The position numbers and the translations under genes were made by a program. A stretch of DNA of 62,967 nt, filler included, from Choristocarpus tenellus KU-1152 (lineage: Eukaryota > Protista > Phaeophyceae), in assembly GCA_964200185.2 (NCBI GenBank). It is 12 parts of 12 records of this genome, joined end to end, with 100 filler letters (N's around TTAATTAATTAA, not from the genome) between each part and the next. Parts side by side here need not be neighbours in the genome. Positions count along the whole stretch, not along the records: positions 53,473 to 59,758 come from CAXNAD020008475.1; 11 more parts are not named here. The stretch is one strand, 5' to 3'. Under the pieces are notes generated by a model that made no database searches, was not told where the DNA came from, and saw nothing but the letters and a program-made list of their open reading frames with translations. The number at the start of each line of letters is the position of its first letter. The stretch's first letter is position 1. Shown here piece after piece: positions 53,335 through 59,858 of this stretch.

Positions 53335-53515
53335 GACTCAAAGTATCTGGGGGGGGGGGGGTGGTTTGTGAGNNNNNNNNNNNNNNNNNNNNNNNNNNNN
53401 NNNNNNNNNNNNNNNNTTAATTAATTAANNNNNNNNNNNNNNNNNNNNNNNNNNNNNNNNNNNNNNNNNNNNCCAACACCACACACACACACACACACCC
53501 CAGATACTTTGACCC
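53335..53515 (-). mobile_element. F3 MITE ends (53335-53372 and 53473-53515) on either side of a spacer
   Basis: Match the reverse complement of the two ends of 59522-59699. Confidence 0.75.
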
Positions 53516-54679
53516 AAGTATGAGGATTTTATGTACCCCCTGTGTTGCCAATAATACTCACCATTGCTCATCCTTGGAACACAACTCATGTTTAATTTGA
53601 AACATCAAACTGCTATCATGCGTTCTCACTATTGCTGTTGCTCTTCCTCCCCCTCATACAGGATGACAATAGCCCAAACCCAAAAATCCTGAAAGGTTCA
53701 ATCACTCGAGCAAAAAATGTGTCATCTCTATCCCACGCAGCTTGCTTTACTCTTCATGGACATAAAACTCCTCAAAAAACTGCATCGGTACAAAACTGTG
53801 TCATTACAACTTACACTCCCACTACCATTAGCATTAGATCCCTACTGATTCTCTTTTGCCTACTATCACCAAGGACAAAGGAAAATTGATCTCCCTCAGA
53901 ACAATATTCCGCCTCCCCCCCAACCCCCGCCCACCCCCCAAGAAATAATTACATTATATACACAATTCAAGTAAATTAGATCAATTCGAGATAGTCCTCA
54001 AAAAGTGACTCCCCTAATGTATCTCAAACACCACTACTAAAACAAGAACCCCACGAAACTCGAGTATTAGAATTCAGGACACTCGCTCGCGATTATGACG
54101 ACTTTGAAATCCTACCATCACTGGAGGAGCAGCCTAACAATAATGCCAGTCAGTTCCTGATCTCTATAGCGACAGGGACATCGAGCACTGGCTCTGGGAA
54201 TGTTGGATGTCAAGTGGAAGATGGCACAACACTTTGGAATCTAAGTTGTAATGAGGGGGAGTGGCTGAGGTATATTTCTCAATGTCCTTTGTGATTTCTA
54301 CATGTTACAATGGACAATATACAGAGGTGAGTTTACAAATGACTAGTAAATGAAAATCCGTCATATACAGGCACAATCTCGTGTAATCAAATGTGGAATT
54401 GGTTCACCTCCCCCCTCCCCCCCCGCTCTCTAGTTAATTGAACCATCTAGTTATACGTAGGTGGGTCCCGTCAGTTACACCTATATGCATACATACAATA
54501 ATATCAACGTTGAAAAACAGTACAATGCAGGAGTAGTCACAGCTAACGTGCATGATGAAGGACTCTCAAAAGGAGAAGGAATCACTGCAAATGGCGCCTG
54601 GATATGGAGGCGAAATTCTCAAGTACTCATATAATGCCTGCCACCTTTTTGGAACAACACTCAGACCACCAACACCCAC

Positions 54680-57600
54680 CTTCGTATCCGGGCACTCTTG
54701 TCTTCCCAGCGCTCATTGAAGAGGTCTTTTGGCCAGGAGTACTCTTCCTTTCCCCACCTCTCCTCCCCAACCCCTGACCCTTCCTCTCCACTACCCTCCA
54801 TTTCTTGACCAGAACTATTATTTTTATCTCTTCCACTTCCTTCACCTGACATTCCCCTCTGGTCACTACGAATGGGTAGAACCTTACCAAGCAACGGCTC
54901 TCCAATTTGTGCATCTGGGGAGATGGTTCCAGCAACAGTCCCGACACCCATGCCATCACCATGGTCCCTCGCCTCACCCTCTACTAAACCCATTCCCAAC
55001 TCTTCATCCTCATCTCCAGCTAAGAGACTGTAATCATCACTACCATACGCACTTCGATCAACACTGCCGGCCCATGCTCTTCCTCCCTCTCCCCTTACCT
55101 TCCCCTCTGCACCTTTGCCCTGGTTTCCCCAGTCAAACTGCCCCCCACCAACACTTACTCTTGCCATTGCCTCTACTGCTACCTTTTCACCAGACTCCTT
55201 TTCCTCAACTGTTCCACCTGCCGGACTATCTGTGACATCCCTACTGCCCACAGATAGAGTCCACTCTCTACCCCCAGGGAGGCGTATAGTTTTGTGGATT
55301 CGGACTGAGGGGGCGGGGCGTGGCAGATGCTCCTGCAACCACTGCCATCGCCAATTTCCTCCTTGCCCCTGCTCTGCAGTTGCACCTTCCCCATCCCTAT
55401 CCCCTTCCCCTTTCCCCCTGCCAGCACCACCAGCCAATAGCTTTTGGATAGGGGCATCTACCACCTCAAAGCAGACAAAACATGGCACACGCTCCTTAGT
55501 TGAGAATGCAAATGACTCTGATGGGTGCACATTCACCACACGGTGCCTTCTGTTTCCAAGAGGGATGTAAATCAACTGCTCATGCCCTCCCCCCAACTTG
55601 TTATCCTCAGCTTTTGTTTCCTGCAGCCTCTTGGAGCCCTCCTCAGTTCCCACTCCAGTCCCCCCCAATTCTTCAATCCCAAACCTGTCCCTACTGGCGA
55701 AATCACCTCCACTATGGTCACTGGGAATGCCATAGCCCTCTCTCAAACTACTTTCTCCCCTCACACTACCAAAGCACTCCATTGCAATGGCACTAAGTTG
55801 ATCCCTAAGCCCCTTAGTTCGCTCTTCCTTGGGCAGGGTCCTCAGCGATCGGGACATACCTGTGAGCCTTGCCAAGAAGGAGGGGGTATCCGTATACAGA
55901 TTCACATTCTCATCCTTTAACTGCCCGCTCTCCTCCATATCCAATCCCTCTTCTGTTTGTATTGCCTCTGTCCCTCCAACATCCCTGACCATCCTATAAG
56001 CGGCCTTTTGACCACATTCCCCAATCTCAACTAGTAGGCGCTTGAGAGCCTTAATTCCACGTTGATCAATAATTATCTCATCACCTCCACCCCACACCTC
56101 GTTTGTGTTGCTGGCGTGTCCTTCCAAGGCCCCATTACCTCCACTGTTCTTGCCAGAGGTATCACTATCCCCAACACGGTCACCACCTATGCCTGTTGAG
56201 GGAATGGAAACAGAATCGACAAGCTTTGAAGGGGGGAGACAAAAGGCCCTCAACTGGAACTCCAAGGCATGTGCAAAGTAGAGATTTTCTGAGCACCGGT
56301 TGAGGAGCCAAGCCTCGAGCTGACCCCCAGTGTAGTAGGAGTTCCACACAAGAAAGGTAGCTAACTGCAGTGGCAATATTTTGTGCAGGGAGACGGGAAT
56401 GGAACTGAACTTGTAGGGGTGACTGAAGTGGTCTCATCATAAAAATTCTCCGATTGTGATCTTGCATTGGTCTGTTCAAACCAAGTTATTTGTCAGTTCA
56501 CACCCAATTGTGTTGTATGCAATAAATGGAAATAAACCACTTCCCACATATCCACCTAAAGCATTAAAACCAAGTTACACAGATGTATGATAGGCAGGTA
56601 CGATCCCCAAAGTCCAAGAACCAACAACAGTAGTAGCGGTTGTACATTAGCACACTATTCAAGATATGAGATATGGGAATTAACAACTACCTCCAAGCTT
56701 GCTCCCATCTCACCTGTGGAGCAAAGAACTCCAGGCATGAGGGTTCACTGGAAGCCACCTTCAGGAGGTCACCAAGAGTATCTTCATACGCATACATGCG
56801 CACCAACAGCCCAAAGGTCACCCGAAGGATCCTGTCCCGGCCCACAGCCCCTCCTGCTTCCCAACCCCACCGGCGTGTTATACCCTGCCCACTTCCACCA
56901 CTACTGACTGCTCCAATGGCACCACGCAGCCTCGATGACTGCCACATCTCAAGTAGGGAGTCCAGGCGGAAAGACCAGGTCTCCCTGGCCTCCTCCATCC
57001 TCCATGCAAAGTGTTCGACAATATCTATGGAAGAATCCTGTCTACTCGAGGTCCCCCCGTCACTCTCGCTTCCCTGCCATCCCTCCTGCTGCCTCCTTCG
57101 CTTTTGGTGGCGTCGACCATGTTGTTCCCCTGCCTGTTTCCGTTCTCGCGACTGAACGTCCTGGGTTCGACAAATATTGTCCGGTGCACCACCACCACCC
57201 AAACCCCCTCCTTCCTCCTCACCAGTTGGGACTTTGTTACCAGTGCATTCAGCACTGGAGAAGCTTGCGGATTCGCCACGTTCACTATCTATGATGCTGG
57301 CGCTTTCATTGTATGATGAGCCATACAGGCTGTCTTCACCCAGGAGGCGTGTGCTCAGTCGGGACCCCATAAAGATGGTTTTGTATCTTTCAAGTCCGAT
57401 TCCACCAGGGTAAGCAAGGGCACGTATCGAGTAGTGGTTTGTGGAAGGGTGGTGAGTTGAGTTCATGAAAGGGTTACTAAGTCTGGGGGTATGTTTGCTA
57501 GTCGTGGTATTCACGCCTTGCGCATATTCTTGCCCTCGCTCCAAGCTGCAATGTACAGTGGGGAAGGTCTAAAATACAACTGACTAATATTGCAACCTAC

Positions 57601-58279
57601 TAAACCGCATGTCCTAGAGAGTCAAACGTGGACACCAAGACTGTGCATGGGCATGACGGTAGACGAGGCGAGAGCAAACCTAGGAGTTGGCTGGCTGCTC
57701 CTCAGATGATTTAAGCACACAATCTGCATGGCTACAGATGCGATAGACAGCGCAATGAGCGTCCACCACAAGAAGACAGATATCTCACGGGGATCTGTGA
57801 CAAGGACTACCCCTTTTGCGACGAGATAGCACAAATTTGCAAATGCCCAGACTTTTCGTATAAAGGGCCACGTTAATTTCCGTCTCTGGAGAAAGGGAAG
57901 CACGTGTGGGAGAAGTACCAATATTCGGAGCAGGGCGAGCCATACCTTTTACAAGGGGTGGGGAAGAGAGGTGGGCTCATAATGTTAAATTAATATTTCA
58001 TGGCAGGCTACATATTTCGAGTAATACATGTTAGCATCAAGTAGATACGGGCAAAAGTGGGAAGAAAAGGAGGCAGGAGATCAAGGGAAGATACGAAAAT
58101 CTTCCCCTATCCTCGCCGACGCAAACGTAGCGTACCACATCCACCATTTGCGTGGCAAAGTCCTTTCCACTCAAGGCTGTGATGTACTGAGTACCACCAT
58201 ACTCGTAGGGGTTTTGCAGATATAGGAACACGACCGCCACATCACAGCCAATTGAAGCTGAGAATGGAGGAGTGAACAT
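54680..58279 (-). CDS. Phosphatidylinositol 4-kinase (type III beta/PIK1-like), 5' portion with N-terminal TM module. Exons: about 58279-58136, 57945-57680, 57545-56714, 56364-54680
   Basis: LEFFAPQLATFL..LLNRCSENLYFAHALEFQL (helical PIK region); IYIPL..RVVNVHPSES..STKERVPCFVCFEVV and FNERWEDKSARIR (lead-in to the kinase domain); the catalytic C-lobe was not found in this contig. Confidence 0.85.
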
Positions 58280-59521
58280 GAACAATTTCTATCCCAACCC
58301 AGCAACACCTTTCCTATCCACTATCCTTCTGATGCAATGAGACAACAAAGAGAACCTCACCTCACCATCATCCTCGCGCGGGATATGATGCGCGAAAAAT
58401 TAAAGTGGATGTGTATACTTGAATATTACGTGTGTGTTGTGAATTAAATTACCCCGAAAAATGTGTTAGGAAGGGGTTAGAATTAGAAGTGCCAAAAAAA
58501 ACAATGGTACTACTATTACATACTCCTACTACTAATACTAATATGTTTTGATATTATTGTAAGTTAGAAGAATTTACAATCAATCCATTTTGTTGAATCT
58601 CAAACTTTAAAACTTTATTCTCCCACTTTTTCGGTGAAACCAGACGTGTGACACCCTAATACCTTAATACTATGTATATGGTTGATTAAGTTCAACGATT
58701 TTGTATTATCATAACAACAAATAATAATACAACGATAAACACTACAATAGAGTAGTAGTTGTAGTGGAACTCTACACACAACTTCAACCTCGTTCCACAA
58801 ACATTCAACCCCTACAAACCAATTTATTAACTTCATAATACTGGGTATGTGAAAATGTCAACGCACCAAAGCTCTTGCAACAAGGAGGCAATCACAATCA
58901 CCAGACTGAACTCTTCCACCTCAGAGGGTAAGATTGAGTTTCACATATCATATCCCAACATCTCAGAATTAGTTGAGGAAATCCAGAACAGAACAAAAAA
59001 CTGAAAGCACAACAAATAAATGTCCCAGAATGACTGAGCAACATCACAGCAGAGAAATAGATCGGTCAGAATCGGAATGGATCTTCGTTCTGACAGTCAT
59101 TTTGGCTGTTTGGTCAAATCCCCATCTTGTGGGTGTGGTTGGTTGTTATGAACTGGTCCGTATAGCGAGTTTCAGTGAGGTGGTTGGCGGGCGCAAATGT
59201 ATATGACCGCACGTCTTATCCACTAATAAATGTGTGTGTCCGAGCCCCCAAAAAGGAATCTGTCCTTGACAGGTACAAAATGAAGGGAGATTCCTTTATA
59301 TACGCAGAAATGTCGTCCACATCACACTAAGAATCAAAACACCAATCAATCCTTCAACTTCATTGTGCAATACATATTGTCTTACGTCATCCCATACCAC
59401 TAAATACACACACGGCTTCTGTTGAGGGTTACCCCACCTATTTTAATAGAGTGTTCTGTGAGAGCCATATTCCACAGAAGGTATGCCCTGAAGGTTACCT
59501 ATCTTGAACATCATGCGGAAG

Positions 59522-59699
59522 GGGTCAAAGTATCTGGGGGGTGGTGTCGACGTCCGTTTTTCACCCTTTTTTTCTTTTTTTTCTTTTTTGGAGTGATTTG
59601 GTCGCACCTGTCGGATTTGAAATGTCAGCAAAAAAAATAGTTTGACCGAAACGGACGCCCCCTCACAAACCACCCCTCCCCCCCCATATACTTTGACCC
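59522..59699 (+). mobile_element. MITE subfamily F3, complete (178 bp)
   Basis: TIRs gggtcaaagtatctggggg / cccccatatactttgaccc; flanking direct repeat AAG. Confidence 0.92.
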
Positions 59700-59858
59700 A
59701 AGGTATACCCTGAAGGTGACCTATCTTGAACATCAGGATATTCGTGTTACTTTTGTTGNNNNNNNNNNNNNNNNNNNNNNNNNNNNNNNNNNNNNNNNNN
59801 NNTTAATTAATTAANNNNNNNNNNNNNNNNNNNNNNNNNNNNNNNNNNNNNNNNNNNN

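What the first reader, a model, noticed from the sequence alone, without database searches (positions are those of the whole stretch)
54680..58279. PI 4-kinase apparently fused to a 4-TM TAPL-TMD0/MENTAL-like membrane module
Seen: two short upstream exons splice in phase (58136|57945 phase 0; 57680|57545 phase 2; 56714|56364 phase 0) onto the PI4K helical region. They give SIGCDVAVVFLYL..DFATQMVDVVWLALLRILVLL..NLCYLVAKGVVL..FLWWTLIALSIASV, i.e. four hydrophobic helices with intramembrane D (TM1), D and R (TM2) and K (TM3). Known: type III PI4Ks are soluble enzymes recruited by adaptors. The ABCB9/TAPL TMD0 and STARD3 MENTAL domains are 4-TM late-endosome/lysosome modules which, as I recall them, show the same D / D..R / K pattern. 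Inference: an integral-membrane PI4K carrying its own endolysosomal address, an architecture I do not know to be described.
Basis: partly seen in the sequence, partly recalled or inferred. Interest (0 to 1): 0.8.

Follow-up and report, generated by a model that had tools for sequence, protein, structure and literature searches.

The report
Membrane-anchored PI 4-kinase of stramenopiles
Brown algae, diatoms and water moulds share a lipid kinase that makes the membrane-address lipid PI4P and, unlike its soluble animal, yeast and plant relatives, carries its own four-helix membrane anchor; which compartment the anchor targets is not yet known.

Summary
The fusion is real and old. The piece is a contig of the brown alga Choristocarpus tenellus holding the 5' part of a PI4KIIIbeta gene; the catalytic exons lie off the contig. 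Two short exons encode a ~135-aa hydrophobic module. They recur at the same intron positions in other brown algae, and single-chain module+kinase proteins exist in Ectocarpus, diatom-clade transcripts and oomycete 'PIK-J'. A second oomycete PI4KIIIbeta clade lacks the module (0/17, against 29/37). AlphaFold gives four helices; only a TM1 Asp/Glu and a TM2 Arg are conserved family-wide. One correction: RNA-like contigs and orthologues put the exon-3 acceptor at 57386, not 57545. Splicing of intron 1 was not seen in the one RNA-like run. The TAPL-TMD0/MENTAL link is unproven: the helix layout of the oomycete model matches TAPL's NMR layout, but Pfam, PDB-sequence and fold searches found only generic four-helix bundles. 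Best reading: an integral-membrane PI4KIIIbeta that makes PI4P on an endomembrane without needing a soluble recruiter. The lysosomal address is a testable guess. No description found in searchable papers; Meijer and Govers 2006 could not be read.

The parts
58136..58279 (-). Exon 1 (48 codons, ATG at 58279): TM1 with conserved Asp13 (codon 58243-58241), luminal loop, start of TM2 with Asp47
   Evidence: mostly not covered in RNA-like run X3
57946..58135 (-). Intron 1 (190 nt, phase 0, GT-AG); position conserved in orthologues; unspliced in X3
57680..57945 (-). Exon 2 (266 nt): TM2 with invariant Arg55 (codon 57927-57925), basic cytosolic loop, TM3 with Lys92, TM4, conserved HLRSS end motif
57387..57679 (-).
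   Evidence: joint 57386-57680, depth 122, in X3; orthologous acceptors
56714..57386 (-). Exon 3 (673 nt): conserved juxtamembrane helix, low-complexity linker, start of the helical (PIK/LKU) domain
56365..56713 (-). Intron 3 (349 nt, phase 0)
   Evidence: joint seen at depth 309 in X3
54680..56364 (-). Exon 4 (1685 nt): rest of helical domain, PI4KIIIbeta N-lobe pieces with long Gly/Glu-rich inserts, up to the start of the catalytic region; later exons lie beyond the contig

Best explanation
This is the brown-algal member of a stramenopile-wide (ochrophyte plus oomycete 'PIK-J') subfamily of PI4KIIIbeta that is an integral membrane protein. A ~135-aa N-terminal four-helix bundle, both ends cytosolic, is inserted at the ER. 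A buried TM1 Asp/Glu - TM2 Arg ion pair holds the bundle together and probably licenses ER exit. The bundle then holds the cytosolic helical and kinase domains on an endomembrane (Golgi/TGN about 0.45, endosome/vacuole/lysosome about 0.35, other about 0.2), where the enzyme makes PI4P. It thereby does the job that soluble recruiters (ACBD3, NCS-1/Frq1, Arf1) do for animal and yeast PI4KIIIbeta. Shown: gene structure, conservation, single-chain fusion in relatives, beta type, intact catalytic motifs in the Ectocarpus orthologue. Predicted: four helices, topology. Inferred: membrane insertion, ion pair, sorting role, compartment, activity.
For: Exons conserved in order and phase. Exon 2 spliced to exon 3 in X3. 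Single-chain natural models: Ectocarpus fasciculatus CAM9598174.1, 1306 aa, module to kinase C-terminus; Mallomonas module + PF21245; two MMETSP transcripts, at least one labelled a complete ORF, and P. infestans PIK-J. All 14 hits of the exon-2 profile in 1.84 billion proteins resemble this module, and each one followed up with enough flanking DNA sits on or just before a PI4K. Kinase is beta type (PI4KB E 3e-67 vs PI4KA 3e-45). Four predicted helices, pLDDT 79 and 87; mean hydropathy 1.0-1.9; basic loop 2 and C-tail in P0015 (4 and 5 K/R vs 0 and 0 in loops 1 and 3). TM1 acid 31/31 and TM2 Arg 34/34. Module tracks one oomycete paralogue clade (29/37, support 99) and is absent from the other (0/17, support 100).
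Against: No localisation or activity data. TM1 and TM3 are only moderately hydrophobic (1.0-1.15 in P0015). Loop 3 of P. infestans is basic (5 K/R), against the positive-inside rule. In Choristocarpus run X3 intron 1 is unspliced and intron 2 partly retained (91 vs 122), so the full four-helix mRNA was not seen in this species. Ochrophyte-oomycete module homology is modest by profile (HH probability 58% at best). Catalytic exons of this species are off the contig.
Confidence: 0.8

Rival explanations
1. One reading: the module is a true homologue of TAPL/ABCB9 TMD0 and STARD3 MENTAL and is an endolysosomal or vacuolar address, so the kinase makes a lysosomal PI4P pool.
For: P. infestans model helices 2-25, 29-38, 48-70, 75-101, 117-159 versus TAPL TMD0 NMR helices 2-30, luminal 32-38, 41-64, 81-107, 115-140 with both ends cytosolic (PMC6199259). 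TMD0 alone sorts TAPL to lysosomes (PMC5297682, PMC9532399). From memory only: TAPL Asp17-Arg57 pair, and an F-x-x-S/T-x-x-D-x3-L-A-x-x-R pattern in MENTAL TM2 in the same register as here.
Confidence: 0.35
2. The module is a sensor or docking unit rather than an address: it binds a lipid, ion or membrane partner and regulates the kinase, in the spirit of the oomycete GPCR-PIPK fusions.
For: Polar residues inside TM3/TM4 vary by lineage as a set (K/Q in brown algae, H/H in the diatom clade, L/Q in oomycetes); stramenopiles fuse membrane domains to lipid kinases (PMC5784254); TMD0 and MENTAL are also interaction modules.
Against: Luminal loops are short and unconserved; a long, variable low-complexity linker separates module and kinase in brown algae; no conserved ligand pocket shown.
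Confidence: 0.2
3. In Choristocarpus itself the main product lacks TM1 or the whole module, because transcripts start near 58162 or retain introns 1-2, giving a soluble kinase like the NCBI model; the four-helix form is minor or condition-specific.
For: X3: unbranched contig 57680-58162 through intron 1, no depth over most of exon 1, intron-2-retaining contig at depth 91; NCBI model P0001 starts inside intron 2.
Against: Exon 1 keeps ATG, donor, frame and 60% identity to Discosporangium, with fewest changes at codon position 2 (22/15/29 and 24/13/31). One run, kind not on record, contigs only, depth falling 5'-ward; contigs drop rare forms.
Confidence: 0.15
4. Separate small membrane-protein gene upstream of a soluble PI4K.
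For: The NCBI model for this species omits both exons; many database models of relatives start downstream of the module.
Against: Exon 2 splices in frame to exon 3; exon 2 ends at a phase-2 donor without a stop; single-chain proteins in many species; most module-less models of the diatom clade start within about 60-140 residues of the PIK motif, against 219-315 in complete ones, so look truncated.
Confidence: 0.02

Closest known systems
PI4KIIIbeta / PI4KB / Pik1 (PF00454, PF21245)
   Same: Helical + catalytic domains; best PDB match E 3e-67; VIVK, DRH and DFG motifs intact in the Ectocarpus orthologue.
   Different: Characterised members are soluble and recruited by ACBD3, NCS-1, Arf1, 14-3-3 (PMC6563779); this one has four N-terminal hydrophobic helices and long low-complexity inserts.
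Oomycete PIK-J (annotation name in P. infestans T30-4, P. palmivora, Achlya, Thraustotheca)
   Same: Among the closest kinase-domain relatives (about 60% identity to the L008 query); same N-terminal four-helix module with TM1 acid and TM2 Arg in register.
   Different: Module under 20% identical; Glu for Asp in TM1, no TM2 Asp or TM3 Lys, an extra luminal helix. No functional study found; whether the 2006 annotators noted the helices could not be read.
TAPL/ABCB9 TMD0
   Same: N-terminal four-helix unit, both ends cytosolic, near-identical helix spans and a short helix between TM1 and TM2 in the oomycete model; charged residues inside helices (PMC6199259).
   Different: Sits on an ABC half-transporter; no sequence or structure match could be obtained; lysosomal sorting shown there, not here.
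STARD3/STARD3NL MENTAL (PF10457)
   Same: Four-helix N-terminal membrane unit before a cytosolic domain; similar TM2 motif as recalled from memory.
   Different: Pfam model does not match any member; no long cytosolic N-tail or FFAT-type region; cholesterol binding untested.
Oomycete GPCR-PIPK fusions (PMC5784254)
   Same: Membrane domain fused N-terminally to a phosphoinositide kinase in stramenopiles.
   Different: Seven helices, and a PI4P 5-kinase of a different fold.

Membership tests
PI4KIIIbeta | PI3K/PI4K catalytic domain closer to PI4KB than PI4KA or Vps34 | tested here: met
   Orthologue P0026: E 3e-67 PI4KB, 3e-45 PI4KA, 8e-29 Vps34; the window itself ends before this domain
PI4KIIIbeta | Helical PIK/LKU domain before the kinase | tested here: met
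   PF00613/PF21245 in relatives; window exons 3-4 align to that region though Pfam misses them directly
PI4KIIIbeta | Catalytic Lys, DRH and DFG motifs | tested here: met
   Present in P0026; not testable for Choristocarpus (off contig)
PI4KIIIbeta | Soluble enzyme recruited by adaptors | tested here: not met
   Four predicted hydrophobic helices at the N-terminus; a prediction, not a fractionation
PI4KIIIbeta | PI to PI4P activity, wortmannin/PIK-93 sensitivity | not testable with these tools
   needs assay
PIK-J subfamily | Kinase-domain closeness plus shared N-terminal module | tested here: met
   the quick tree does not resolve ochrophyte + PIK-J as one clade
MENTAL (PF10457) | Match to the Pfam MENTAL model | tested here: not met
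   not among listed families at E<=10; single-sequence scans are weak for remote membrane homologues
MENTAL (PF10457) | Four helices with TM1 Asp, TM2 Asp..Arg, TM3 Lys | tested here: inconclusive
   Full pattern in brown algae, TM1 acid + Arg only family-wide; MENTAL pattern is from memory
MENTAL (PF10457) | Late-endosome targeting and cholesterol binding | not testable with these tools
   needs cell work
TAPL/ABCB9 TMD0 | Four helices, N-in/C-in, short luminal helix after TM1 | tested here: inconclusive
   Met in the P. infestans model, luminal helix absent in the brown-algal model
TAPL/ABCB9 TMD0 | Profile or 3D similarity to TMD0 | tested here: inconclusive
   No hit, but no TMD0 sequence or 3D structure was confirmed to be in those libraries; PMC6199259 reports that its 3D structure could not be solved
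TAPL/ABCB9 TMD0 | Autonomous lysosomal sorting | not testable with these tools
   needs GFP fusions

The most novel reading that the evidence does not exclude
TAPL TMD0, MENTAL and this module are one ancient, mobile four-helix sorting domain built round a buried acid-Arg pair; stramenopiles fused it to PI4KIIIbeta before ochrophytes and oomycetes split, giving a hard-wired endolysosomal/vacuolar PI 4-kinase.
Probability: 0.25. Interest if true: 0.8.

Novelty: new variant of a known kind. Interest (0 to 1): 0.58.

Why it matters
Type III PI 4-kinases are textbook soluble enzymes placed by adaptors. A multi-pass version conserved across kelps, diatoms, chrysophytes and oomycetes would show a second way to fix a PI4P pool, in lineages with tractable models. 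Oomycetes keep it beside a module-less paralogue, so the division of labour can be tested directly. The module has no Pfam family and is missed by many gene models, including this species' own. If it proves homologous to TMD0/MENTAL it would unite two mammalian lysosomal sorting domains whose mechanism is open.

Full report
Source and method. The piece (53473-59758) is a 6286-bp contig whose NCBI gene model is an 818-aa protein of the brown alga Choristocarpus tenellus. Folding and profile work used natural database proteins of relatives (P0015, P0067 and others).

Observation. Of three public runs, X1 and X2 have flat depth like DNA; X3 has 344 on exon 4, 241 on exon 3 and 7 in intron 3, so I read it as RNA (its kind is not on record). 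X3 shows the joint 56714|56364 (depth 309) and a joint from the exon-2 donor 57680 to 57386 (depth 122), not to 57545. Orthologues begin exon 3 at the 57386 codon. X3 also has an intron-2-retaining contig (91) and one unbranched contig from 57680 to 58162 through intron 1 (100), with nothing further upstream. So junction 1 is not seen in this species. The catalytic exons are off the contig.

Conservation in brown algae. Loci L001, L002 and L004 carry exon 1 (48 codons, 40% identity) and exon 2 (47-57%) upstream of the kinase exons, with the same donors and phases. Exon 1 changes least at codon position 2. NCBI models of Discosporangium (CAM9723104.1) and Ectocarpus fasciculatus (CAM9598174.1, 1306 aa) join the module to the rest in one chain; the window's exons are 60% and 65% identical to the former. 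The Ectocarpus kinase domain is beta type with intact motifs.

Range. A profile of exon 2 against 1.84 billion proteins gave 14 hits, including Mallomonas annulata with a PI4KB PIK domain and unnamed algal contigs in which PI4K frames follow directly. A kinase-domain search from one of these (L008) returned oomycete 'PIK-J', diatoms and other ochrophytes. Fifty-one of 121 proteins carry the module at 20 bits or more (about half were in the profile, but hydropathy alone shows three or four segments). They include two MMETSP transcripts in the diatom clade. In the quick tree the PIK-J clade has 29 of 37 with the module and a second oomycete PI4KIIIbeta clade has 0 of 17; most module-less diatom-clade models look N-truncated. 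Profile-profile probabilities: brown vs other ochrophytes 99.7%, brown vs diatom clade 96.7%, oomycete vs other ochrophytes 58% (E 1e-4), reversed controls about 1% or less. The oomycete link therefore rests on position, helix count and residue register as much as on score. Lineages outside these were not sampled.

The module. AlphaFold gives four long helices for Discosporangium (pLDDT 79) and for P. infestans PIK-J (pLDDT 87, plus a short helix 29-38). In P0015 loop 2 and the C-tail are basic and loops 1 and 3 are not, which fits both ends cytosolic and so a cytosolic kinase. Both conserved charges fall mid-helix, so a buried ion pair is the simplest inference; I could not measure it in the models.

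TMD0/MENTAL. For: the oomycete model's helix spans track TAPL TMD0's NMR helices closely, including the short luminal helix (PMC6199259), and TMD0 sorts TAPL to lysosomes. From memory, TAPL uses an Asp17-Arg57 pair and MENTAL TM2 has the same F..D...LA..R register; these are leads. Against: no MENTAL listed in Pfam scans, no PDB-sequence hit, and only generic tetraspan fold hits. The libraries may hold no TMD0 or MENTAL structure and I had no tool-held sequence for a direct profile test, so the question stays open (about 0.35-0.4). It should not be filed as TMD0 or MENTAL; it may still work like them.

Mechanism. Most likely the module is inserted at the ER, stabilised by the acid-Arg pair, and carries the kinase to an endomembrane where it makes PI4P, replacing the soluble recruiters of animal and yeast PI4KIIIbeta (PMC6563779). 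Beta type favours Golgi/TGN; the TMD0 likeness favours endosome or vacuole. A sensing or docking role, and a module-less isoform in this species, remain rivals.

Novelty. The enzyme class is known and the oomycete member has an annotation name. Ten paper searches found no account of a multi-pass PI4KIII, but the 2006 Phytophthora survey, which from memory reports other membrane-fused lipid enzymes, could not be read and may have drawn these helices. Verdict: new variant of a known kind, real and broadly conserved, with an uncatalogued domain; interest 0.58.

Noticed in passing
window:58880-59150: High-copy repeat upstream of the gene: summed contig depth 6500-8000 in X1 against 16 for the gene, also 300-400 in RNA-like X3. 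Probably a dispersed transposon-derived element.
   Followed up: no
window:59478-59735 and 53494-53515: 20-nt inverted arms 138 nt apart (59522-59541 / 59680-59699), a 36-nt direct repeat 222 nt apart, and a third copy of the arm at the other end of the contig: MITE-like, and a likely reason the contig breaks there.
   Followed up: partly
window:54661-57466: The NCBI model P0001 starts inside intron 2, omits exons 1-2 and reads through the exon-4 donor to a stop at 54661; it is mis-annotated at both ends.
   Followed up: yes
window:57387-58162: RNA-like run X3 shows intron 1 unspliced and intron 2 partly retained while intron 3 is nearly fully spliced; could be a way to make a module-less kinase, or 5' assembly loss.
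   Followed up: partly
L008:4166-4700: An unnamed alga (eustigmatophyte-like by my guess) appears to have an intron at the same place after the TM2 Asp as brown-algal intron 1, suggesting an old intron.
   Followed up: partly
A5, positions 92 and 122 of P0015: Diatom-clade modules have His at both the TM3 and TM4 polar sites (10 of 12 each) plus the conserved His128; a possible metal, haem or pH site.
   Followed up: no
P0101, P0056, P0091: Oomycete PIK-J models with extra RCC1, protein kinase/CDC50 or RRM domains; probably merged gene models.
   Followed up: no
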